In this document: positions 1 through 50,735 of the stretch, in pieces
Layout: every line of letters starts with the position of its first letter
Position numbering within the stretch: the first letter of the stretch is position 1
Source: Pecten maximus
Taxonomy: Eukaryota
Reading direction: 5' to 3'
DNA length: 64,000 nt
NCBI RefSeq assembly: GCF_902652985.1
Contig: NC_047033.1
Coordinates: forward strand, 10,106,001 to 10,170,000
Notes under the pieces: generated by a model
Told to the model about the DNA's origin: nothing
The model's database searches: none
Seen by the model: the letters and a program-made list of their open reading frames with translations, nothing else
Made by a program: the position numbers and the translations under genes

Positions 1-435
1 CGCCACAGCGTCAAAAGAAGACTGGTGTCTCTAGGGAAAATAAAGTGAGGAAGATTGAAAAAATAGACAGACAGAAAAAGATTAGACGTCAAACTAAGTA
101 AACGTCTTGATTGAGATTGACGTACAAGTGAGAATGAAATAAAACTAATAAGAGTGATAAGTAACAACGCCATAGAACAATTTATACCAGCTTGACAGTT
201 ATATTGAGCAAGCGTGTACTTAAAAAAGTGGGGAAAATACTAAAAACTGGTCAACAAACGTTTGTCGACGATTAATTTTGGGACACCAAAACTCGTATTC
301 TGATAAAATGTATGCAAAGTCTACAGTAAACATTTCTAAGATGTCTGCTGTATTGGAGATATTTTCCTAGTTCCTTTCATATGAGGTGCTACATGGAGTT
401 CCGAAAATCATGTACAAGACAAAGATCTAAAACTG

Positions 436-3400
436 CATCATACAGCTGTTTCATCAGTGATGTTAGGGACATCATACAGCTGTTTCGTCTGTGTGGGACT
501 CGTCAGTGATGTTAGGGACGTCATACAGCTGTTTCGTCTGTGTGGGACTCGTCAGTGATGTTAGGGACATCATACAGCTGTTTCGTCTGTGTGGGACTCG
601 TCAGTGATGTTAGGGACGTCATACAGCTGTTTCATCAGTGATGTTAGGGACATCATACAGCTGTTTCATCAGTGATGTTAGGGACATCATACTGCTGTTT
701 CATCAGTGATGTTAGAAACATCATACAGCTGTTTCATCAGTGTAGGACTCGTCAGTGATGTAATGGACATCATACAGCTGTTTCGTCAATGTAGGACTCG
801 TCAGTGATGTTAGGGATATCATACAGCTGTTTCATCAGTGATGTTAGGGACATCATACAGCTGTTTCATCAGTGTAGGACTCGTCAGTGATGTTATGGAC
901 ATCATACAGCTGTTTCGTCAATGTAGGACTCGTCAGTGATGTTAGGGATATCATACAGCTGTTTCATCAGTGATGTTAGGGACATCATACAGCTGTTTCA
1001 TCAGTGTAGGACTCGTCAGTAATGTTAGGGACAACATACAGCTGTTTCATCAGTGATGTTAGGGACATCATACTGCTGTTTCATCAGTGATGTTAGAGAC
1101 ATCATACAGCTGTTTCATCAGTGTAGGACTCGTCAGTGATGTTAGGGACACCGTACAGCTGTTTCATCAGTGTAGGACTCGTCAGTGATGTTAGGGATAT
1201 CATACAGCTGATTGGTCAATGTAGGACTCGTCAGTGATGTTAGGGATATCATACAGCTGTTTCATTAGTGATGTTAGAGACATCATACAGCTGTTTCGTC
1301 AATGTAGGACTCGTCAGTGAGGTTCGGGATATCATACAGCTGTTTCATCAGTGATGTTAGGGACATCATACAGCTGTTTCATCAGTGATGTTAGAGACAT
1401 CATACAGCTCTTTCATCAGTGATGTTAGAGACATCATACAGCTGTTTCATCAGTGTATGACTCGTCAGTAATGTTAGGGACATCATACAGCTGTTTCATC
1501 AGTGATGTTAGGGACATCATACAGCTGTTTCATCAGTGATGTTAGAGACATCATACAGCTGTTTCATCAGTGATGTTAGAGACATCATACAGCTGTTTCA
1601 TCAGTGTAGGACTCGTCAGTGATGTTAGGGACATCATACAGCTGTTTCGTCAATGTAGGACTCGTCAGTGATGTTAGGGACATCATACAGCTGTTTCCTC
1701 AATGTAGGACTCGTCAGTGATGTTAGGGATATCATACAGCTGTTTCGTCAATGTAGGACTCGTCAGTGATGTTAGGGATATCATACAGCTGTTTCATCAG
1801 TGATGTTAGAGACATCATTCAGCTGTTTCATCAGTGATGTTAGAGACATCATACAGCTGTTTCATCAGTGTAGGACTCGTCAGTGATGTTAGGGACACCG
1901 TACAGCTGTTTCATCAATGTAGGACTCGTCAGTGATGTTAGGGATATCATACAGCTGATTCATCAGTGATGTTAGAGACATCATACAGCTGTTTCATCAG
2001 TGTAGGACTCGTCAGTGATGTTAGGGACATCATACAGCTGTTTCGTCAATGTAGGACTCGTCAGTGATGTTAGAGACATCATACAGCTGTTTCATCAGTG
2101 TAGGACTCGTCAGTGATGTTAGGGACGTCATACAGCTGTTTCGTCAATGTAGGACTCGTCAGTGATGTTATGGACATCATACAGCTGTTTCGTCAATGTA
2201 GGACTCGTCAGTGATGTTAGGGACATCATACAGCTGTTTCGTCAATGTAGGACTCGTCAGTAATGTTAGGGGTATCATACAGCTGTTTCATCAGTGATGT
2301 TAGGGACATCATACAGCTGTTTCGTCAATGTAGGACTCGTCAGTGATGTTAGGGACATCATACAGCTGTTTCGTCAATGTAGGACTCGTCAGTGATGTTA
2401 AGGACATCATACAGCTGTTTCATCAGTGTATTAGGGACATCATACAGCTGTTTCATCAGTGTATTAGGGACATCATACAGCTGTTTCATCAGTGTAGGAC
2501 TCGTCAGTGATGTTAAGGACATCATACAGCTGTTTCATCAGTGTATTAGGGACATAATACAGCTGTTTCATCAGTGTATTAGGGACATCATACAGCTGTT
2601 TCATCAGTGTAGGACTCGTCAGTGATGTTAGGGACACCGTACAGCTGTTTCATCAATGTAGGACTTGTCAGTGATGTTAGGGATATCATACAGCTGTTTC
2701 ATCAGTGTAGGACTCGTCAGTAATGTTAGGGCCATCATACAGCTGTTTCATCAGTGATGTTAGGGACATCATACTGCTGTTTCGTCAATGTAGGACTCGT
2801 CAGTGATGTTAGGGACATCATACAGCTGTTTCGTCAATGTAGGACTCGTCAGTGATGTTAGGGATATCATACAGCTGTTTCATCAGTGATGTTAGAGACA
2901 TCATACAGCTGTTTCGTCAATGTAGGACTCGTCAGTGATGTTAGGGACATCATACAGCTGTTTCATCAGTGATGTTAGGGACATCATACTGCTGTTTCAT
3001 CAGTGATGTTAGGGACATCATACAGCTGTTTCATCAGTGTAGGACTCGTCAGTGATGTTAGGGACACCGTACAGCTGTTTCATCAGTGATATCAGGGACA
3101 TCATACAGCTGTTTCGTCAATGTGGTACTCGTCAGTGATGTTAGGGATATCATACAGCTGTTTCATCAGTGATGTTAGAGACATCATACAGCTGTTTCGT
3201 GAATGTAGGACTCGTCAGTGATATTAGGGACATCATACAGCTGTTTCGTCAATGTAGGACTCGTCAGTGATGTTAGGGACATCATTCAGCTGTTTCGTCA
3301 TTGTGGGACTCGTCAGTAATGTTAGGGATATCATACAGCTGTTTCATCAGTGATGTTAGGGACATCATACAGCTGTTTCGTCAATGTAGGACTCGTCAGT

Positions 3401-3896
3401 GATGTTAGGGACATCATACAGCTGTTTCGTCAATGTAGGACTCGTCAGTGATGTTAGGGACATCATACAGCTGTTTCATCAGTGATGTTAGGGACATCAT
3501 ACTGCTGTTTCATCAGTGATGTTAGGGACATCATACAGCTGTTTCGTCAGTGTAGGACTCGTCAGTGATTTTATCGACATCACACAGATATCGCGTCCTT
3601 GGACTCGTCAGCGATGTTAATGACGTCATTTAGTCCTGCTAGATCTCGTCAGTGATGCTAGGGACATTGTAAAGCTGTTTTGTTTTTCTAGTTCTCATCA
3701 GTGATGTTAAGGACATCATACAGCCCTTCGTCCTGCTAGATCTCGTCAGTGATGTTAAGGACATCATACAGCTGTTTCGGCCTTCTAGGAATCGTCAGTG
3801 ATGTTAAAGACATCATACAGCCGTTCGTCCTACTAGAACTCGTCAGTGATGTAGGGACATCATACAGCCGTTCGTCCTGCTAGGACTCGTCAGTGA
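436..3896 (-). ncRNA. Tandem array (~80 units) of hammerhead ribozyme monomers (49-nt full units mixed with 33-34-nt stem-II-less units)
   Basis: The reverse complement of the unit catcatacagctgtttcgtcaatgtaggactcgtcagtgatgttaggga reads acatca CTGACGA gtc-ctacatt-gac GAAAC agct GTA tgatgt cccta. This gives the conserved core CUGANGA/GAAA/NUH, stem I acauca:ugaugu, stem II GUC:GAC and palindromic stem III ACAGCUGU. Unit count is extrapolated from 31 units counted in the first ~1250 bp. Confidence 0.9.
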
Positions 3897-3954
3897 AACC
3901 AAAAGACAAGACGTCATTCTAATCCCTTCGCGTCTGAGAGCCAACGAAAATGAA

Positions 3955-4343: not shown

Positions 4344-4498
4344 NNNNNNNNNNNNNNNNNNNNNNNNNNNNNNNNNNNNNNNNNNNNNNNNNNNNNNNNN
4401 NNNNNNNNNNNNNNNNNNNNNNNNNNNNNNNNNNNNNNNNNNNNNNNNNNNNNNNNNNNNNNNNNNNNNNNNNNNNNNNNNNNNNNNNNNNNNNNNNN
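4344..4498. other. Assembly gap (N run)
   Basis: 155 consecutive N. Confidence 1.
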
Positions 4499-21051: not shown

Positions 21052-23065
21052 CTATATTCATTATCTGACATATGCTGTATCCGCAATTGAAACCATATTC
21101 AAAGATATTATCAATCTAGGTGTCTGGGGCTTCCTTTAAAGTATCATATTGTGATGCCATATCAGCTACAAGGAAAACTCATTCTATTTTTTTTTTCTTG
21201 AAAACATAATCCCTACACGGTTAATTAAATGAGGACAAATATAGATAATACATTGCATTTTATTGCATGTAGACTGCACCCATACCTTAAAGTAGAAGTA
21301 TATGCTGATATATACATCACTGATTTTAGGGTGGTTAACATTATCAGACAATCGCAAGACTATCAACACGTGGTCTAGGTAATAATAGGGAAAACCAAAT
21401 CCTCATTAGTGTTGCCGGCCAGTTGATTGATTCATATCTCCAGGGTTACGTATCCATTTCATTCTGAAACAACCTCACACAACGCTGAAATTGACACACA
21501 CGAACGGAGACGCGTATTATAGGCCCGACTGTATAATTACTAGACGTATCAACCAGGGACATTCACAATGAATCGTTTGTCCTGATCTACGAGCAGAAAA
21601 AATGGTGACACGTGCATCACTGCGCCTGTTGATATTGCGCTGACTAGTACCACGTGGATTGATCAAAATGCTGATCAAAATGCAGATCAAAATATGAAAT
21701 CTAATCAAACGTAAATACTAAAAAAGTTATCAATTTTGGAATACACAAGCCCAGGTAGTGTTTAAATAATCATTAGCATCCTGGATGACGTCATAAACTT
21801 TATAGACCAATCGGTGAAAACAAGAAAAAAAAATCCAGCCATTTGTTACTATTTGTATGTAAGTATAATAATCATCCTTTCCCGCAAGAATGTGTTTTGA
21901 TCAGAATACCTATTTATAAAATAAATACTTATATTTTTGACGTGTCGAAAAGGCTGACTATGGTTAAAAACGTAGAACTCAGGGAATAATCATAATGGCG
22001 TCGTCATCACCATCCATTTTATTCGTTGGCTATATTCAAGCTTTACGATTTCCACTAGTGTGCAAACAAAAAGGTAAAAAGCGTCTGTATGGGTAGCAGT
22101 TTGGTGTGGCGATCAATATGGCAAGTAAATATTGGCATATAAATAATTCCAATTATAGTTTTTTTTTTCTATTTATAACAACGCTACTAAAAGTAATACA
22201 ATGCATTGTTATCTTTTCACTTAAGTTAATTCTCATTCAACATGTTGATAGGGTAGTTTACTGATGTCTTTAGGAAATTAACCTATATTTTAAATCCAGC
22301 AAAATGAACTAGTACACTTTTTTCTTTGTGACACAATCTATTTTACTGTTGGAATCGATACCGTCAAGATAACTATACTTTTGAAATATCGTCTTCAATT
22401 TTAGGAAAACGCTTCCTTGTTATCCATGGACCGTGTAATGGAGTTATTCATATACAGCGATATTGTAATCATTTCCAGGAATATTCTGTCAAGGCATTTT
22501 AGACGCATTGAATGTATCGAGTCATTTAAATCCAAATAAAACATTTTGTTCGATATTTCTTTAGAAAGTAACTTTCAAAATTGATGTTTGCTCATACTAA
22601 AAGCTCGGACCCAGAAATTGGTAATGAGAGGCACGAGACCCTTTCATACCTGTTATGGATGTTTAATCTAACTTACAATACACCGAATGAAGCGATATCT
22701 GTGTATATGAAATCGACATGGAAATCAACAACTGTCAATTACCTTCGTAAAATCAATGTAAATTATACATAATGTCAAATCAATTATAACTTCACGTGTA
22801 AATCTACTTAACAACATTTAGTTAGTTAGTTAAACGACGTTCTATTTATGCGGAGATGTAACACGCCGTTTGATTGGTCAGTGTTTGCTGAACAGAAGTT
22901 ATTTCAATGGAACATCATATGAATCAACGGACAACCAGTTGTACAGAATATGCAACAACTTGTACAGATGTTATACACAATGCAACACAACTAAAACGGA
23001 ACAGGACAAACTTATACAAAATACGAAACGTATATACAACGAAACAAAAAGTCTTGACATATGAT

Positions 23066-23310
23066 GGGTAGTCGGATGGCACAGTGGTAACAGACTTGCT
23101 TTTCACGTAAGCGGCCGGGGTTCGACTTCCCGATCGGATGTGAAAACATATGGGGTCAACTGCCCTACCACGTGGGTTTCCCCGGATACTCTGGTGTCCT
23201 TCCGCAGTAGGACTCCTCGCGCGCTTCCATCCGGGTCATCAAGAGTGACTAACATGAAAGTTGATTTAGCTTATTTCGCAATCGTTGTAAAATGAATAAA
23301 GTTTACATTG
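23066..23310 (+). mobile_element. tRNA-derived SINE (V-domain type)
   Basis: A-box tggcacagtggtaa, B-box ggttcgact, central gtgggtttccccggatactctggtgtccttcc, and aataaagtttaca tail. Homologous to 46211-46392, 56400-56612 and 25114-25240. Confidence 0.85.
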
Positions 23311-23350
23311 TATTTCGATTTTAGGTCGCCTCGTATGTATCAACACGAAA

Positions 23351-23381
23351 CTGACGAGTCCTAGAAGGACAACCAGCCGTA
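23351..23381 (+). ncRNA. Decayed solo hammerhead of the array family
   Basis: CTGACGA GTCC TAGAA GGAC aaccagcc GTA is identical to the 29854 array over 20 nt. GAAA is damaged and stem I is lost. Confidence 0.75.
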
Positions 23382-25113
23382 CGGAGCAGTTTAATTCAGT
23401 ATGACTCTGTATCTGCTATGTCTGATCTTGAATTTGTTTTAAAAGGTGTTGATATCGTGTGTGTCGTTTGTATAACCCTTTACAGAATACAAAACTACAT
23501 ATCACATATAAAGTACAACACACCTTATAGAGAACATAATTTATGTACAACAAAAGGCAAATAAAAAGAAAACACCATACAAATAACACCAACCGACTTA
23601 TTCACAACGGTACAGTAAATATAAAACACAAAGAAACTGAAAATAAATCTAACAAAGAGAGTAATTGTCCCCGTTGGCACCAGGACAGATGTATCTAGGA
23701 CTATTTTATGCACCCGAATACAGCTCTGAAGTTTGCAGAGTCGTGAACAGACACGTCATTTGAGATCTGCCGAAGCTGTATGGACAGACGTGTTTTCCTT
23801 TGGGAAGTCCTCCGCTCGCCAAAGCTCTGTGGCTCCTCTAAAAGTGCCTTTGATGTTGTCTTTTACAGGCGCTAATATACTCTCTTACATGCTAAATTGG
23901 CAAGTTCAGCATAAGACATGTGGTCTCTCACGTTTTTGAGTTGATTCCACTTTCTTGAATGTCGAAAGGGACTGATTATGTCCCTCCATACTTTGCCGAT
24001 ATTTGCTGCTGAGGGGGCATTAGGTTATCTAAGAATGAATTTAGATGTATCAACTTTCTGATATTGGAAGGTTATGGGAATCGAACCCCAGCAAAACATG
24101 TGTACATATAACATACAAGTTATCTTATAATGTAAGTATTTTTGCGAACTAACCTCTTCAGATTTATTCGCAAAAACATGATTTTGCGATCGGGCATCTA
24201 GAAATGACTTTAAATTAACGAAAGTTGAACTGTAAGAGTCACGAACTCCACCATACCCGCAATACTCCTATAACAGTAACCGGTAGTTTGGCCTTATTAG
24301 GGAACAACCAACCAATTGAAAACATAGATTTTTAAAACAGCCCCTGTGTATAGAAAGTTGAGCCAAGGATAAAATATCTGACAGCCACTGATTGGCCAGT
24401 ATGTTATGAAGCGAGAAAATAGATATGTAGCCTGATAGGTAGCTATCAATAAGAAATGTTGATATTAATTTCCTAAGTCCGATTGATTTTTTTCCCAATT
24501 GGCCGTATAACAGAGTTCTTACTTTCGTACTGTTAATCGCGAATTACTTAAATTTACAATTGGCGCTCCTCGCGGATTAAAATAGAAATAGAACGCGAAA
24601 AATATAAATCACAATTTATACACAAAACAACTTCTACATCACACAATTCTTACACGACAAAACTAGAACACAGCAATACAACGATACAATTAACAACTAT
24701 ATACAATGTAAACGATAATCATTACATCTAATACGACATTTCTCACAACAAACAGAATCTAGATACAAAGACAATAAATGCAGGTATGCTAGGGAATGAA
24801 AATTTAATATTATTCCTGAACGTAAGGAGGCCTACATGTCTGGCAACAGGAAGCAATCTATACTATTCTGATTATATTCCCCTTGTCGCATGATCTCCAA
24901 TTGCTTATAATCAGACTGAATTGCGTTCTGCCCTTTTTATTACCTCATAGCAAATATTATATAACTTCTAACACAACATCTCGGAAATGAGTAAAACATT
25001 AACAAGAAATGTCAAAAAGGAATTTGATACCCCAGACAAACAAGGCAGGTTTGATTACTTTTTGATAATTTTGGCGACAGGTATTTTCTGAAGATTATTT
25101 TTTTTATTTGTTG

Positions 25114-29135: not shown

Positions 29136-29853
29136 CTCCCTTAATACTTTTCCATGAGTCTCCATGCCAATTTATATTTTTCTTTGTATTTTGCCCAAAT
29201 CAATTCTTAATTTGATTTTTATTTTGTTATCATGTCATTGGGCTTTGTTGTTTGTGTATATGTAATATCGCCAGTGAGGTTACATATTTACTTTTTACTT
29301 GGATGACAAGAACGTTTTGATAAATATTCCTCAAATCCGAGTAGTTATTTGTTGCTTTATATATACCATCTAGATTTTTACTGGTTCATCGAAAAGGAAA
29401 TAATCACAGCTCTGTGATACTTACACCGATATACTGAATAGGTGGTGTATTGTATTAGTCAAAATTGATTTCCTTTCTTATTTCAATCATGTCCGTCTTT
29501 ATCACGACGTTAATTTGTCAAGAAAATCAGAAACCATCTGAAGAAGATTTCGATAATAGTGTCAGAAACACGAGCCCAAACGTGTTCTGAATAATCTCAG
29601 GCTTCGCTGGAAGTGGACTGGTATCCATAATGGTCAAAATAACAAATAAAAATCCCTGAGAATATGTCCGTTTACGCAGTATATTTCTAGTAACACTTGG
29701 AAAGTACGTTTTTGAAAGTATTTGATATTTATTGTTATCTCGCGAGTAAATATTTATTCATTAAAATATTAGACAACAATAATATTCAAAAATGAAGATT
29801 TTGACATTTTTAATCTGTTACCGGCGGTTTCTATGGTCACCTTAAGCCCTATG

Positions 29854-30231
29854 CATCACTGACGAGTCCTAGAAGGACGAAACAGCTGCATTGGCCCTAA
29901 CATCACTGACGAGTCCTAGAAGGACAAAACAGCTGCATTGCCCCTAACATGACTGACGAGTCCTAGAACGATGAAACAACTGTATTGGCCCTTATATCAC
30001 TGACGAGTCCTAGAAGGACGAAACAGCTGTAGGATGTCCCTAACATCACTGACGAGTCCTAGAAGGACGAAACAGCTGTAGGATGTCCCTAACATCAATG
30101 ACGAGTCCTAGAAGGACGGAACAGATGTATTGGCCCTTATATCACTGACGAATCCTAGAAGGACGAAACAGCTGTAGGATGTCCCTAACATCAATTATGA
30201 ATCCTAGAAGGACGGAACAGATGTATGATGC
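29854..30231 (+). ncRNA. Tandem array of 8 hammerhead ribozyme monomers (47-49 nt), same family as 436-3896
   Basis: For example 30043-30086 reads acatca CTGACGA GTCC TAGAA GGAC GAAAC AGCT GTA ggatgt. Units 4 and 5 have intact cores; the others carry core, stem or cleavage-site mutations. Confidence 0.92.
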
Positions 30232-32384
30232 CATATAATTAATTTTGTTTCTACTGTACCCAATTCTCGTTTCTGGCTCATTTAGATATAACTCTCAATT
30301 TGTTTTAAACGATGCTAATATCATGTGTCATTTGTACAGTCCAAAATCTTACCATAAAACAGTGGAACAGGAAGTGCACATCTAATTGCTGAAAAACTAT
30401 TTATAGCCAAACGGAAATAATTAGCGGAGCGTTTTAAATGATAAATAACCACTAACAGACTCAATGTTAGCAGGACAAACGCAGTAAAACGTGTCTGAGG
30501 ACTAATTACGTCAGCGGCAGACAATTTCTCAGAATAACTGTCACTAGGTAACAAACGATCTATTTCTGGGTGGCTTCCATGGAACAGTTATTGACTAGTT
30601 AAAGACAGTCGGCCCCTCTTTTTCTCTTAAATCTGATATATAAGTGTTTGTGTATTTATATTGCTTTCCTTTTACATAAAATAAACATGGTTTTATCGTT
30701 TAAAACATTCTTCGTTGATAAATTAATTAGGGAACTGGATCAAAAACCGAAGGAAACAGAGTGCAGTGAGATTAAAGCCATGGTATATGAAAGGGTAAAT
30801 GTCCTCTGTTTCGTCAAGTCATGGAAATGCAAAGTTGATCTCAGTAATGAACAATACCATGTCATCAAAGTGTGAAACAGGATATGGACCATGTTACCCT
30901 TAGATACACTTTCTATTCGCTCAATAAATCTTGCCATTTCTCAATGAGATTAACCAAAAATGTCGAAATATTCTATCAAGTTACTTTGTCCCAAACCAAA
31001 GGTCTTCCATCTTAAACCGGATGCTGATGTTATCATAAAGTGCTTATTATGCAAACCATAAAAAAAATCTTTATCGTTTCCTAAAACAATGAAACAAATC
31101 TCAGAGTGACTGTATGGAAGCAGTCTAAATGCGTAATATCCATTTTGAAACGAAAATCTTACGACCACGACCACGACCACGACGACGATGCTGTGATAAT
31201 CGAAGCCGAGAAAGTAACACTACAGTCTCGCTTTTGAGTCTTCTCGTCACAGACGAGACAGAAATTTCTCGAATCCGAATATTCTCATTTAAAGTTCTAG
31301 GCCGCGACAGGTCAACCCAAGGTAAATATCCGAAGTGCGTGGTTCTACTCTCCTTGCCCGTGTCGGTTTGCATTTCTCGGGAAGCTGCTCAAAATGACGC
31401 TGGATATTCAAAGGGGCGAACTTCAACCTTATTCCAACGTTATAAATTCAAAATATATTAATGTTCTACATCATTACTAGGCACTTCCTTCTTTCTAATC
31501 CGGGATGAACGAGATTTCACTGTATGCATAGTCGGATTTAGCGTTCATTCCAAGCGTTCGCATATTTCTTAAAAATTATGATTTCCAATAGGCTTAAAAA
31601 AAAAACACAAAAAAAAAAAACTAAAAAAATCCTTCATCGACAATTTACCATATTTCATTATGAGAAAATACTGCTGATATCTTAATATTGCTGTTTTTAT
31701 GTAAAAGTTTCTTCCAGGTTCGATTTGATTCCATGATCTTTTCAGGCTCGGAAAGTTTGGCTGCACTTCCATCACAATATTTTTGCACTTTTGCAGATAA
31801 GCCGTTGCACATCACTTTTACGAAGTACGCTTGACTCCAACGGCTTTCTCTTACAGTCGTAGATTTTTTTTAATTTTACAGGATTTTAATTCCATCGCCG
31901 ACAGAATTTCGTCAAAAAAAACATGACACTAAAACAAGATTTATTTTGAAGGAGAATTACGTGTTAAATATATGCTTATATTTGTCATGTGTATTTGTTT
32001 TAATTTCCAGTTTAACTGACGCGTCTGTAATTAGTTTCTGGTGTTTTCGTGTATTTCAGGAAGAGTCTGCAACAAAAATAGTCGTTTGTGTCAGTACTCC
32101 CAGAGGTGCTTGGCGTTAATGGAAGTCTGAGGATGCGATGTCCCCTACCAGGAACCATTCTTCTTCTTAATAACGCTACATGAATGTAATTTTGTTAAAT
32201 GAAAACTTACATATGGCATCTTCAAGTATGTAAGAGAAGAATAACCTTAGATAAAAAATCAAGATCCACATGCGCATTTATTCAATTGTGTAATTATCTA
32301 CGTACAGGTAAGCAACAGGTACTGTATGTACTTAATGTAATTATGTTTGTAAATCGTATGTATGTTAAATACAGAACCGATGTC

Positions 32385-36792: not shown

Positions 36793-38092
36793 ATATTTGA
36801 TCACCTAAGACAGCTCTGGCGTTCTATATAACACGGTATAGTTATACATCCAATGTCTAAATACAAGTATGGTCTATATATCTTTCATGGCGTCAATATC
36901 ACGTTAAAATGCTCACTGATTTAATTCTGGTTAGAAATAGAATGATTGATTTTGTGATATAACTTTTTAATCGTAACCTTATCTGATATAACAAACATCA
37001 TTCTCGATCCCTTATCCCATCACCAGGACCAATTATCTTTAAAATTCTCAGTTACCTCCCCCTGCTTGTTTCTCCATATTGTCACTTCTATGTATCTACG
37101 GCTACATCTGAAATTTAGTAGATTGTTAAATCAAACCACATTTGTGATTGAAATGTTGTTATATTTGTATTCTCTTCCATTTCATTAAATCCCATCTGAA
37201 TGCATCGTCATTAGGAATCCTTCCTCCCATACCCATAGAACGATAACTATCGGAACGAACTAGGACAGAACAAAGGGGAATAACTCTACACAACAATTTG
37301 TTAATGGCTTTTTATATCATCTGGTCATTAGGGGAAAGATAACACCAGGACTATTAATGTTTTAGAACCTGCGTTTACGTTTTCTGTGGCGTTCATCATC
37401 AATATAATCGCCATTACGTTGAGCCAGTACCATTAAATGGGGCCCAATTACTCCTTGGTGACGATTAAAATGTCCATTTAATATTAGAACAACGCAAATC
37501 TGTACTTTAATAGAAAGACTAAATCGATTTCTCCTCTTTTCAACTACACGTTTTTAACAAGAAATATGTATGTAACGTATTATATCTTCAAAGAAAGTAT
37601 TCTTGTTAGTTTTTTAATTCGACGAAGTCACAAAGTGTCCGTCGAATATCTAAAAATTCTTCTCTACTGTTCGACGTTGGTCGTTAAGCACGAGGTAAGG
37701 ACAACTTCAGGTATATTTTTTTTATAAGACAACAGAAAACTAGCTCAAAATTGACAAAAGGAGGATAAAAAAGAACAAATACAACCATATATTTGTATGG
37801 AGACTCTTGAAAAATTACAAGGAGACTCATCCAGGTGTTCAGGAAGAGTAATCGTCTTCTGTGTCATCGACGACACTTACAATACCGATCTGTGTCAAAT
37901 CCGTGTAAAGTCACAATCGCGATATGAAAAAGGGTTGGTGATAACGGAACCATTTGGCACATCAACAAACAGGTAACACGTCTGATTTCATATCTCATAA
38001 GGACATAGAATATTTCTCAATGCGAGACGTGCATCCATCGTTTAGTTTTTGATTTCACATTAAGATGGCAACTTACTATCTTGTATGTTCAC

Positions 38093-39250
38093 GATACTTA
38101 GTTGTACGTACTAGATATTAAGCCGTAGGTACAAAATACTTAGTTGTACATACAAGATACTTAGTTGTACATACATTTGTACAAGATACTCAGTTGCACA
38201 TATACGTACGATACTTAGTTGTACATACACGATACTTAGTTGTACGTACCAGATATTAAGCCGTAGGTACAAAATACTTAGTTGTACATACAAGATACTT
38301 AGTTGTACATATACGTACGATACTTAGTTGTACATACAAGATACTTAGTTGTACGTACTAGATATTAAGCCATAGGTACAAAATACTTAGTTGTACATAC
38401 AAGATACTTAGTTGTACATATACGTACGATACTTAGTTGTACATACAAGATACTTAGTTGTACGTACTAGATATTAAGCCGTATGTACAAAATACTTAGT
38501 TGTACATACAAGATACTTAGTTGTACATATACGTACGATTCTTAGTTGTACATACAAGATAATTAGTTGTACATACTAGATATTAAGCCGTAGGTACAAA
38601 ATACTTAGTTGTACATACAAGATACTTAGTTGTACATACATTTGTACAAGATACTTAGTTGTACATATACGTACGATACTTAGTTGTACATACACGTACG
38701 GTACTAAGGTGTATGTACAAAATACTGAGTTGTACGTACAAGATACTAAGTTGTACATACAAGGGAGACAAAGTTGTACGTACAAGTACGATACTAAGTT
38801 GTACATACAAGTACGATACTTAGTTGTACATACACGTACGGTACTAAGGTGTATGTACAAAATACTGAGTTGTACGTGCAAGATACTAAGTTGTACGTAC
38901 AAGATACTAAGTTGTACGTACAAGATACTAAGTTGTACGTACAAGATACTAAGTTATACGTACAAGATACTAAGTTGTACATACAAGTATGATACTAAGT
39001 TGTATGTACAAGATACTAAGTTGTACGTACAAGGGAGACTAAGTTGTACATACAAGTATGATACTAAGTTGTATGTACAAGATACTAAGTTGTACGTACA
39101 AGATACTAAGTTGTACGTACAAGATACTAAGTTGTACGTACAAGATACTAAGTTGTACGTACAAGGGAGACTAAGTTGTACATACAAGTACGATACTAAG
39201 TTGTATGTACAAGATACTAAGTTGTACGTACCTGGGAGACTAAGTTGAAC
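38093..39250. repeat. 21-bp minisatellite (gatact[t/a]agttgtac[a/g]tacaa) with higher-order variants
   Basis: Direct inspection; explains the repetitive ORFs YVQLSIL / CTYNLVS / YVQDTKL. Confidence 0.95.
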
Positions 39251-44011: not shown

Positions 44012-44170
44012 TAAGGATTGATTGTCAATTTTGTTGCTTGCATGGACTGATGAAGGGAAGTGAACCTCGTGCAAATGGTACATGAACTGCTTCGCAGTTC
44101 ACTTCATTTGCACGAGGTTCACTTCCCTTCATCAGTCCATGCAAGCAACAAAATTGACAATCAATCCTTA
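44012..44170. mobile_element. Perfect palindromic MITE (66-bp perfect arms, TA ends)
   Basis: 44012-44077 is the exact reverse complement of 44105-44170. There is an inner stem tgaactgc-ttc-gcagttca and TA at both ends. Confidence 0.85.
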
Positions 44171-50429: not shown

Positions 50430-50735
50430 GTCGTAGCGGAAACAACAACGAAGAAGGACCGGTTATCAAACTCGTGAAGTATGACGTAAACACCGAAGGA
50501 GGGGAACTGGTTATTAGACTCGTGAAGGTTGGCGGAAACACCGACGAAGAGGAACCGGTTATCAGACTCGTGAAAGTTGGCGGGAACACCGACGGGGATG
50601 AACGGGGCCAGACTCGTGAAGGTTGGCGGAAACACCGACGAAGAGGAACCGGTTATCAGACTCGTGGAGATTGCCGGGAACACCGACGTAGAGGAACCGG
50701 TTATCAGACACGTGATGGGTGGCGGAAACATCAAT
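50430..50735. repeat. 48-bp GC-rich minisatellite (~6 units)
   Basis: Unit cagactcgtgaaggttggcggaaacaccgacgaagaggaaccggttat; one unit has a 2-nt deletion. Confidence 0.9.

What the first reader, a model, noticed from the sequence alone, without database searches (positions are those of the whole stretch)
436..3896. A 3.5-kb satellite whose monomer is just a hammerhead ribozyme: candidate ultra-minimal (49-nt) retrozyme array
Seen: on the minus strand each 49-nt unit contains, in order and with correct spacing, stem I 5' (ACAUCA), CUGACGA, stem II (GUC/GAC), GAAA, palindromic stem III (ACAGCUGU), the GUA cleavage triplet and stem I 3' (UGAUGU). Only a 5-nt linker (CCCUA) is left over. Established: hammerheads occur in animal tandem repeats (newt satellite 2, Schistosoma Sm-alpha, Dolichopoda pDo500, non-LTR retrozymes) and as minimal forms in Penelope-like elements, but those monomers carry one to several hundred nt of extra sequence. 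Inference: a transcript would be diced into ~49-nt RNAs with 5'-OH/2',3'-cyclic phosphate ends that could circularise. Rolling-circle reverse transcription of such a circle would regenerate head-to-tail arrays, giving a ribozyme-only selfish element.
Basis: partly seen in the sequence, partly recalled or inferred. Interest (0 to 1): 0.95.

Follow-up and report, generated by a model that had tools for sequence, protein, structure and literature searches.

The report
Hammerhead ribozyme minisatellite in king scallop
This 3.4-kb stretch of king scallop DNA really is a tandem repeat whose 49-base unit is one small self-cutting "hammerhead" RNA motif, but it is a locally over-grown and partly dead copy of the ribozyme part of a larger mobile element found all over the genome, not a free-living 49-base element.

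Summary
On the minus strand of 428-3898 I parsed 79 head-to-tail segments. Forty-three are 49-nt units made of a 44-nt type I hammerhead plus the linker CCCUA. Only 32 of them keep core and helices: 17 with a G-C pair at 10.1-11.1 and 15 with G-U. Another 32 segments are 33/34-nt deletion units without helix II and with an incomplete core. Only two units reach Rfam's Hammerhead_1 cut-off.

The genome's statistics match the published Pecten maximus assembly exactly. The same 49-nt unit forms arrays of 0.25-3.2 kb on most chromosomes (at least 1,447 candidate places). Its family consensus is an intact hammerhead that passes Rfam's cut-off.

About half of the 22 arrays studied sit, in fixed phase, between a conserved ~185-nt 5' arm and a ~115-nt 3' arm. 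Single-hammerhead copies with the same arms also exist. Whole arrays are homogenised for core-killing mutations, and this locus shows 83-181-bp higher-order repeats.

Best reading: ordinary DNA-level expansion of the ribozyme module of an old retrozyme-like or Penelope-related non-autonomous element. The "ribozyme-only 49-nt retrozyme" is not supported. Expression and cleavage remain untested. The scan has already noted this family on other pieces of this genome.

The parts
411..435 (-). Probable remnant of the element's 3' arm, internally deleted (CAGUUUUA joined to the arm's terminal ...UUGUACA)
   Evidence: The junction GUAUGAUG|CAGUUUUA is the same as at 11 other loci. nhmmer with the 3'-arm profile hits only 450-428 (E 0.008). 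The remainder is read by eye against the alignment.
436..440 (-). Last, partial unit (UGAUG): the helix I 3' strand that closes the final hammerhead
441..3533 (-). Young, homogenised part of the array: 41 units of 49 nt (17 intact with G-C at 10.1-11.1, 15 intact with G-U there, 9 defective) interleaved with 32 units of 33/34 nt that lack helix II. Irregular higher-order blocks of 83, 115-117, 132 and 181 bp.
3534..3898 (-). Older, diverged units at the hammerhead-5' edge: units of 47, 48, 49 and 49 nt, a 136-nt degenerate block and a last partial unit. Helix II is of the family-consensus type (GUCCU/AGGAC-like).
   Evidence: TRF finds period 49/97 at 74-82% matches over 3513-3896.
29665..29850 (+). 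5' arm of a second, small copy of the same element
   Evidence: nhmmer with the 5'-arm profile, 29665-29868, E 4e-9; sequence
29851..30225 (+). Second array: 8 units of 47-49 nt with the consensus 5-bp helix II. Hammerhead_1 scores are 24.5-30.9 bits, below the cut-off.
30226..30342 (+). 3' arm of the second copy, ending ...UUUGUACAGUCC
   Evidence: nhmmer with the 3'-arm profile, 30216-30397, E 1e-27; alignment
23313..23478 (+). Single-hammerhead copy of the element: a 5'-arm remnant, one decayed unit (CUGACGAG at 23351-23358) and a complete 3' arm
   Evidence: nhmmer with the 3'-arm profile, 23374-23491, E 2e-10; sequence

Best explanation
The array is a locally expanded, partly decayed copy of a dispersed non-autonomous mobile element of the king scallop. 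Shown: the element has a 5' arm of about 185 nt, one or more 49-nt hammerhead units, and a 3' arm of about 115 nt. The 49-nt unit is the 44-nt type I hammerhead plus the last 5 nt of the 5' arm (CCCUA). Inferred: the array began as a tandem duplication of that 49-bp segment inside the element and then grew and was homogenised by DNA-level processes (replication slippage, unequal exchange), whether or not the ribozyme still worked. Shown at this locus: a derived unit with a weakened helix II, and its 15-nt deletion product (34 nt, no helix II), were co-amplified in blocks of 83-181 bp to about 3.1 kb next to older consensus-type units. Inferred from the intact, well-conserved family consensus: the hammerhead mattered for the spread of source copies, most likely by processing the element's RNA, as proposed for retrozymes and Penelope-like elements. 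Predicted only: in a transcript of the array, neighbouring units would pair their CAGCUG palindromes into an 8-bp helix III and cut after GUA. Only 17-32 of the 79 junctions here are competent, so the products would be a ladder (49, 83, 98, 117 nt and so on), not uniform 49-mers.
For: The family is dispersed: at least 1,447 first-look candidates, with arrays on most chromosomes. Twenty fetched loci hold arrays of 6-66 units, nearly all of exactly 49 nt. The family consensus of 579 units from 20 loci is an intact hammerhead with a 5-bp helix II, and 33 units in 8 loci pass Rfam's Hammerhead_1 cut-off. Arms: the 3' arm is recognisable at 13 of 22 arrays and the 5' arm at 10 of 22, always joined in the same phase (...UUAGGCCC|UAACAUCA and GUAUGAUG|CAGUUU). 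One further 3' arm is displaced by a LINE insertion. The arms alone are dispersed repeats at 77-88% identity. Single-unit copies with arms lie at window 23313-23478 and L026:2780-2975. Growth is independent of ribozyme activity: array-wide G8A (L018, 4 of 65 cores intact), G12A (L013, L025, L028, L030) and A13U (L021); 33-35-nt units without helix II form arrays here and at six or more other places. Copies decay neutrally: mismatch to consensus is 0.041 at core non-CpG sites, 0.05-0.08 in loops and stems, and 0.17 at core CpG sites. Higher-order structure appears here and as haplotypes spaced about 3 units apart in L026, L018 and L030. A dimer's minimum-energy fold is a three-way junction with an 8-bp helix III. 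The same arms and units are abundant in contigs of two other, coded organisms. GIY-YIG (Penelope-type endonuclease) frames of up to 929 aa are present in the genome. The literature proposes exactly this route, from Penelope terminal sequence to local tandem amplification to non-LTR retrozyme, with consensus lengths from 51 to 972 bp (10.64898/2026.07.22.740005).
Against: No autonomous partner was shown. No target-site duplication or terminal hallmark was resolved, so transposition of the composite element is inferred only from its dispersed, bounded copies. Inside large arrays, identity between units hardly falls with distance, and edge units are only slightly more diverged than internal ones (0.940 against 0.955, p = 0.07). 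Simple neighbour-biased unequal exchange would predict a stronger effect. This window's main array has no recognisable 5' arm and only a short 3'-arm remnant. Cleavage and transcription are untested.
Confidence: 0.7

Rival explanations
1. The arrays are made at the RNA/cDNA level but as part of the larger element. During retrotransposition, a reverse transcriptase (for example that of a Penelope-like element, a relative of telomerase) copies the hammerhead segment or a small multi-unit circle again and again. On this reading an array is born in one event and later only decays.
For: The period of 49 nt is exact in arrays of up to 66 units. There is almost no distance decay of identity within arrays. 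Variant haplotypes are spaced about 3 units apart, as copying of a 147-nt trimer would give. The array consensus stays within 0-6% of the family consensus, while the arms are 18-40% from their consensus. Rolling-circle reverse transcription is the published model for retrozymes (PMC7229834).
Against: Arrays uniformly carrying G8A, G12A or A13U cannot come from self-cleaved units. The block patterns are irregular, not strict periods. Here, old consensus-type units lie beside young derived units in one array. The 34-nt dead unit was amplified too.
Confidence: 0.14
2. One reading: the 49-nt hammerhead is itself the whole selfish element. Transcripts are diced into 49-nt RNAs that circularise, are reverse-transcribed by rolling circle, and integrate as new arrays.
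For: The unit is almost nothing but a hammerhead. Arrays are numerous and dispersed. About 40% of the sampled arrays show no recognisable arm on at least one side. Dimers are predicted to fold into an active-looking junction.
Against: The arms join the arrays in fixed phase, and single-unit copies with arms exist. The linker CCCUA is the end of the 5' arm. Dead-core arrays and helix-II-less arrays expand as well. Genomic copies show no extra conservation of core positions. No RNA evidence exists beyond contigs of runs only guessed to be RNA; 488 of about 600,000 contigs of run X13 lay on the repeat, so there is no sign of high expression.
Confidence: 0.06
3. The composite is a DNA element of the bivalve tandem-repeat-containing MITE / Helentron-derived kind (CvA, pearl, DTC84). 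It happens to carry hammerhead repeats as its core, and the arrays grow by rolling-circle DNA replication or recombination.
For: The modular plan is the same: a 5' part of about 150 bp, a core of tandem repeats whose first unit is truncated at its 5' end, and a 3' part (PMC5874043; PMC3879986). Scallops carry CvA.
Against: The unit is 49 nt, not about 156-160 bp. The arm ends (about CAUGUACUG... and ...UUGUACAAUCC) show no 5'-TC or 3'-CTRR with hairpin, and no clear inverted repeats. The published CvA primer sequence is not in the arms (read by eye). The strongly conserved, strand-specific ribozyme points to an RNA stage.
Confidence: 0.07

Closest known systems
Metazoan non-LTR retrozymes (Cervera & de la Pena 2020, PMC7229834; Li, Clavereau & Pollet 2026 preprint, 10.64898/2026.07.22.740005)
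   Same: Head-to-tail genomic repeats, each with a type I hammerhead that has a 6-bp helix I, a short helix II and a 2-bp helix III capped by a palindromic tetraloop, so that two copies are needed for a stable active fold. Low GC content. Coexistence with Penelope-like elements. Copy numbers from dimers to tens of units. The preprint lists consensus lengths down to 51 bp and proposes birth from a Penelope terminal repeat followed by local amplification.
   Different: The invertebrate retrozymes described so far have 150-450-bp monomers (350-390 bp in mussel), with a long self-paired spacer, and are shown to be abundant circular RNAs. Here the repeating unit is the ribozyme plus 5 nt, and the spacer-like sequence sits outside the array as two arms. 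No circular RNA has been shown, and many arrays are catalytically dead.
Classical hammerhead satellites: newt satellite 2, Schistosoma Sm-alpha, cave-cricket pDo500 (my own knowledge; the first two are cited in PMC4209133)
   Same: Tandem or dispersed repeats transcribed into self-cleaving RNAs. Helix III is weak, so activity needs dimers.
   Different: Their monomers are about 330-500 nt. Sm-alpha is SINE-like with a pol III head, which this element lacks. The tRNA-like SINE next to one copy is a separate family.
Minimal hammerheads in the terminal repeats of Penelope-like elements (Cervera & de la Pena 2014, PMC4209133)
   Same: A small hammerhead inside a non-coding terminal module of a retroelement. 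Very numerous, mostly decayed copies. A palindromic helix III implying dimeric action.
   Different: Penelope min-hammerheads have a 7-8-bp helix II, a 4-5-bp helix I and an unpaired base between positions 9 and 10.1. This unit has a 5-bp helix II, a 6-bp helix I and no such base. Penelope hammerheads are usually single per repeat, not arrays of 6-70.
Bivalve tandem-repeat-containing MITE-like elements (CvA/pearl, DTC84; PMC5874043, PMC3879986)
   Same: The architecture of 5' arm, variable number of tandem core repeats, 3' arm, with the first repeat truncated. Such elements seed satellite arrays.
   Different: The core repeat is different (about 156-160 bp, no ribozyme). No sequence similarity was seen. 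This element has no resolved termini of that class.

Membership tests
Hammerhead ribozyme, type I (Rfam RF00163) | Conserved core CUGANGA ... GAAA with a cleavable N-U-H triplet | tested here: met
   Met by the family consensus and by 32 of the 43 49-nt units of this array. Not met by the 32 short units (CUGAUGAAAC lacks two core bases) or by 11 defective units.
Hammerhead ribozyme, type I (Rfam RF00163) | Three helices around the core, with helix I open | tested here: met
   The covariance model aligns full length (1-45) to 44-nt stretches. Helix I is 6 bp, helix II 5 bp (3 bp in this array), and helix III 2 bp plus the AGCU loop.
Hammerhead ribozyme, type I (Rfam RF00163) | Score at or above the curated gathering cut-off (34 bits) | tested here: met
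   Thirty-three units in 8 other loci score 34.1-36.6 bits. In this array only 2 units (35.7 bits) pass, and the rest score 19-33 bits.
Hammerhead ribozyme, type I (Rfam RF00163) | Mg2+-dependent self-cleavage 3' of H17 | not testable with these tools
   Needs in vitro transcription of monomers, dimers and trimers.
Hammerhead ribozyme, type III (Rfam RF00008) | Helix III open, helices I and II closed; score of at least 48.5 bits | tested here: not met
   The topology can form across two neighbouring units: an 8-bp helix III in the minimum-energy fold of a dimer. The best score is 37 bits, below the cut-off.
Non-LTR retrozyme | Tandem genomic repeats with at least two consecutive complete type I hammerheads | tested here: met
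Non-LTR retrozyme | Monomer of about 150-450 nt (51-972 bp in the 2026 preprint) comprising ribozyme plus spacer | tested here: inconclusive
   The unit is 49 nt, just under the lowest published value. If the arms are counted as spacer, the ancestral monomer would be about 350-390 nt, but no tandem of arm-hammerhead-arm was seen.
Non-LTR retrozyme | Expressed as small circular RNAs | not testable with these tools
   Only assembled contigs of runs guessed to be RNA hold the repeat (488 and 866 contigs), and they give no strand, ends or circularity.
Non-LTR retrozyme | Coexistence with, and sequence relation to, the terminal repeats of Penelope-like elements | tested here: inconclusive
   Coexistence is met: at least 150 GIY-YIG matches with frames up to 929 aa. 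Homology of the arms to a Penelope terminal repeat could not be tested because no more genome letters were available. No listed arm hit lies near a listed GIY-YIG hit.
Penelope-type minimal hammerhead | Helix II of 7-8 bp, helix I of 4-5 bp, and an unpaired base between positions 9 and 10.1 | tested here: not met
   The consensus unit has a 5-bp helix II and a 6-bp helix I, and A9 is directly followed by G10.1 (criteria from PMC4209133).
CvA/pearl-type tandem-repeat MITE (Helentron-derived) | Arms plus a core of about 156-160-bp repeats; Helitron-class termini | tested here: not met
   The modular plan is met, but not the unit length or the termini.
Satellite/minisatellite DNA evolving by unequal exchange | Long head-to-tail array, higher-order repeats, array-specific fixed variants | tested here: met
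   Periods of 83/117/132/181 bp; array-private fixed changes; linked variant haplotypes. Distance decay and edge effect are weak.

The most novel reading that the evidence does not exclude
Transcripts of consensus-type arrays are really diced by the tandem hammerheads into 49-nt RNAs or small multiples (98 or 147 nt). These are ligated into circles and serve as rolling-circle templates for a Penelope-type reverse transcriptase. That would make this the smallest known retrozyme, and it would explain the exact 49-nt period, the spacing of variants about 3 units apart, and the near absence of distance decay inside arrays.
Probability: 0.1. Interest if true: 0.85.

Novelty: new variant of a known kind. 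Interest (0 to 1): 0.4.

Why it matters
This shows how far a hammerhead-bearing repeat can shrink. In the king scallop the repeating unit is the ribozyme itself plus 5 nt, and neighbouring units can lend each other the missing helix III. The family gives a clean natural series for studying how a transposon module turns into satellite DNA: a single-ribozyme element, then short arrays, then kilobase arrays, then dead and truncated units. It also helps separate selection on a ribozyme in source copies from neutral DNA-level amplification. For ribozyme work it offers a compact natural tandem substrate to test dimer-dependent cleavage. For genome annotation it explains one fraction of the 'unclassified' repeats of this assembly. 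It does not by itself reveal a new kind of replicator.

Tried and rejected
- **blastn of flanks:** 2.5-kb flanks compared between loci gave almost nothing. The arms were found only by eye and then with MAFFT and nhmmer profiles.
- **Single-sequence nhmmer** was too weak to find the arms.
- **Target-site duplications and terminal hallmarks:** none was convincing at the loci with both arms.
- **SINE idea:** a tRNA-Glu-like head sits directly upstream of the single-unit copy at 23.3 kb. The genome search showed that the SINE family covers only the first ~250 nt and does not include the hammerhead part, so this is a nested insertion, not a hammerhead SINE.
- **Penelope remnant upstream of the second array** (another note on this window): nine ORFs of at least 60 aa between 26 and 33 kb and at 38.7 kb gave no Pfam match. 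The sequence directly upstream of the array is the element's own 5' arm.
- **Autonomous partner:** long open frames in the fetched loci gave one APE-type LINE, a galactosyltransferase and a GPCR, but no Penelope-like element.
- **Covariation:** weak overall. One helix II pair shows 33 compensated doubles in 6 loci, against 20.7 doubles expected.
- **Edge-versus-centre divergence:** not significant.
- **Reads:** I did not lay reads on the main array because the tool turns away long repeats; I used the small second array with its flanks instead. All runs were contigs, so strand, ends and level could not be read.
- **Assembly gap:** the N run at 4344-4498 was left untouched.
- **Literature:** no paper in the library links hammerheads and scallops.
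Full report
**Organism and place.** The window is G000:C19:10106001-10170000 of an assembly of 918,306,378 bases in 3,983 contigs; contig C10 is 44,824,366 bases long. These three numbers are exactly the total length, scaffold count and N50 published for the king scallop, Pecten maximus (PMC7191990). I therefore take the genome to be that assembly.

**The observation.** Tandem Repeats Finder reports overlapping periods of 49, 34, 83, 117, 132 and 181 bp over 454-3896.
- Cutting the minus strand at each CAGCUGUA gives 79 segments between 3862 and 428.
- A 49-nt unit reads, 5' to 3': UGAUGU, CCCUA, ACAUCA, CUGACGA, helix II, GAAA, CAGCUG, UA.
- Rfam's type I hammerhead model aligns end to end to 44-nt stretches spaced 49 nt apart, on the minus strand only.
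- The array is not uniform:
  - 17 units of 49 nt are intact with a G-C pair at 10.1-11.1.
  - 15 units of 49 nt are intact except that CpG decay turned GAC into GAU, giving a G-U wobble there.
  - 11 units of 49 nt have a broken core or helix.
  - 32 units are only 33/34 nt long.
  - 4 segments at the edges are degenerate.
- The short unit arose by deletion of 15 nt between two CACUGA repeats that exist only in the local variant of helix II. It reads CUGAUGAAAC, so it has no helix II and lacks two core bases. It cannot be a hammerhead.
- Only two units reach the Hammerhead_1 gathering score (35.7 against 34). The type III model reaches 37 bits against a cut-off of 48.5.

**The family.**
- A 230-nt piece of the array finds at least 1,447 candidate places and strong matches on most chromosomes, at about 80-87% identity.
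- Twenty fetched loci each hold an array of 6-66 units, almost all of exactly 49 nt.
- The consensus of 579 units from 20 loci is an intact hammerhead with a 6-bp helix I, a 5-bp helix II (GUCCU, loop AGA, AGGAC) and the palindromic helix III.
- Thirty-three such units in eight loci pass Rfam's curated cut-off.
- The window's array is thus a derived subfamily with a weakened helix II (GUC, a 7-nt loop, then GAC or GAU).
- The diverged units at its hammerhead-5' edge (3534-3898) are still of the consensus type. This shows that the derived unit arose and spread within this locus.

**Arms.**
- blastn saw no shared flanks. Printing the junctions showed the same sequences next to many arrays.
- Alignments and nhmmer profiles define a 3' arm of about 100-125 nt that starts right after GUAUGAUG and ends ...UUUGUACAAUCC. 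It is recognisable at 13 of 22 arrays.
- They also define a 5' arm of about 185 nt, from about CAUGUACUG to ...AUCAACACUUUAGGCCC, present at 10 of 22 arrays.
- Both junctions are in one fixed phase. The linker CCCUA of the repeat unit is simply the end of the 5' arm, and the final UGAUG that closes helix I of the last ribozyme is the start of the 3' arm.
- Used alone as queries, the arms are dispersed repeats at 77-88% identity.
- Copies with arms but a single decayed hammerhead lie at window 23313-23478 and at L026:2780-2975.
- In L019 a LINE has inserted between the last unit and the 3' arm.
- The window's second array (29851-30225, plus strand) has both arms.
- The main array has only a short, internally deleted 3'-arm remnant (about 411-435) and no recognisable 5' arm. 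An assembly gap lies 450 bp beyond it and was left alone.

**How the arrays grow.** Several observations show that growth does not need an active ribozyme.
- Whole arrays are homogenised for changes at catalytic positions: G8A in L018 (4 of 65 cores intact); G12A in L013, L025, L028 and L030; A13U in L021.
- Across copies the core is not more conserved than the loops. Mismatch to consensus is 0.041 at core non-CpG sites and 0.05-0.08 in loops and stems. The two CpGs of the core decay fastest, at 0.17.
- Units of 33-35 nt without helix II form arrays here, at a 97%-identical site 7 Mb away on the same chromosome, and on at least five other chromosomes. One array on C15 spans about 11 kb.
- This array is a patchwork of blocks (49+34, 49+33+33, 49+49+34 and so on).
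- Large arrays elsewhere carry linked variant haplotypes spaced about three units apart.
- These are signatures of satellite-type DNA turnover.

**Two observations that fit less well.** Identity between units hardly falls with distance, and edge units are only slightly more diverged than internal ones (p = 0.07). I therefore keep an RNA/cDNA-level origin of arrays as a rival at about 0.14.

**Is the ribozyme functional for the family?**
- The array consensus sequences stay within 0-6% of the family consensus, and units within 2-9% of their own array consensus. The arms lie 18-40% from their consensus (the arm figure is inflated by alignment error and subfamilies).
- One helix II pair shows compensated double changes in 33 units at 6 loci, including C-G to U-A in 25 units of L026, against 20.7 doubles expected.
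- This suggests, but does not prove, selection on the hammerhead in the lineages that seeded the copies, as expected if the ribozyme processes the element's RNA.
- ViennaRNA folds a natural dimer into helix I and helix II hairpins around a core closed by an 8-bp helix III made from the two CAGCUG palindromes. A monomer cannot form that helix. The energies are not unusual against shuffles (z from -0.3 to -2.0).
- This is the published principle of dimer-dependent animal hammerheads (PMC4209133), here in its most compact form.

**Expression and other species.** I did not lay reads on the main array because the tool excludes long repeats. I used the second array with its flanks.
- DNA runs of the same species hold the locus.
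- Two runs of that species, only guessed to be RNA, have 488 and 866 contigs on the repeat and on part of the 3' arm, and none on the unique flanks.
- Two other coded organisms have thousands of contigs with the same units and both arm junctions.
- Contigs give no strand, ends or level. Transcription is therefore only suggested, and nothing points to high expression. The family is shared with other species.

**Comparison with what is known.**
- Animal hammerhead repeats are well known, and since 2020 they have been called non-LTR retrozymes. Invertebrate monomers are 150-450 bp (350-390 bp in mussel) and are abundant circular RNAs (PMC7229834).
- A 2026 preprint reports vertebrate families with consensus lengths from 51 to 972 bp. 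It relates them to the terminal repeats of Penelope-like elements and proposes that a terminal sequence, once inserted, is amplified locally into tandem repeats.
- The scallop family fits that picture. Its hammerhead is of the canonical type I kind, not the Penelope 'min' kind.
- Penelope-type endonuclease frames are present in the genome, but I could not test whether the arms match a Penelope terminal repeat.
- The arm-repeat-arm plan also recalls bivalve CvA/pearl/DTC84 elements, but unit size and termini differ.
- No paper in the library links hammerheads with scallops.
- Earlier notes of this scan describe the same family on other pieces of this genome and reach the same reading. My analysis was made before I read them, and I list them as agreeing, not as evidence.

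**Verdict.** The feature is real. It is a new, very compact variant of a known kind (hammerhead-bearing tandem repeats or retrozyme derivatives), largely decayed at this locus. Interest is moderate (0.4). The most novel reading still open is that 49-nt or small multimer circles act as reverse-transcription templates. I put it at about 0.1.

Noticed in passing
window 23064-23312 (+): A tRNA-derived SINE with a tRNA-Glu-like head (ARAGORN, 23071-23140). The family has at least 2,588 first-look candidates genome-wide at about 84-85% identity. It abuts the single-hammerhead element copy but is a separate family.
   Followed up: yes
G000 C15:6244580-6255502; C3:9524350-9525311; C9:37287852-37289268; C2:2523313-2524904; C1:33981924-33983278; C19:2954339-2954624: Arrays of 33-35-nt units that match this locus's helix-II-less short unit at 80-97% identity. 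The C15 matches span about 11 kb, longer than any 49-nt array I sampled. Their sequences could not be fetched.
   Followed up: partly
L019:1147-3921 (+), with L019:1174-1241: A 925-aa open frame of an APE-endonuclease plus reverse-transcriptase LINE lies antisense between the last hammerhead unit of an array and a displaced fragment of the element's 3' arm. The LINE inserted into a hammerhead element.
   Followed up: partly
L026:3467-6603: In this 64-unit array, 25 units carry a compensated helix II pair (C-G changed to U-A) and 4 carry only the U-G intermediate. Several variants recur about every third unit (a 147-bp higher-order pattern).
   Followed up: partly
window 50436-50730: An unrelated 48-bp minisatellite (about 6 units) containing the palindrome AACCGGTT. 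It has no Rfam match and no hammerhead core.
   Followed up: no
window 38074-39231: A 1.2-kb satellite with a 21/42-bp unit (TACGTACAAGATACTTAGTTG) and a 109-bp higher-order period. It overlaps a meaningless 179-aa ORF.
   Followed up: no
window 44024-44158: A near-perfect 134-nt hairpin that hits several miRNA-precursor models on both strands, all below their cut-offs. It looks like an inverted-repeat (MITE-like) element rather than a miRNA gene.
   Followed up: no
window 4344-4498: A 155-N assembly gap lies 450 bp beyond the hammerhead-5' edge of the main array. The true extent of the array or of its 5' arm may be hidden there. It was not filled.
   Followed up: no
L020:4550-4674 and L022 upstream of its array: Other short satellites directly abut the hammerhead arrays: a ~39-bp GATAAAGTGGAGAA... 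repeat in L020 and a ~33-bp ACGAGAAATAAACTCGT... repeat in L022. Tandem repeats seem to cluster at these sites.
   Followed up: no
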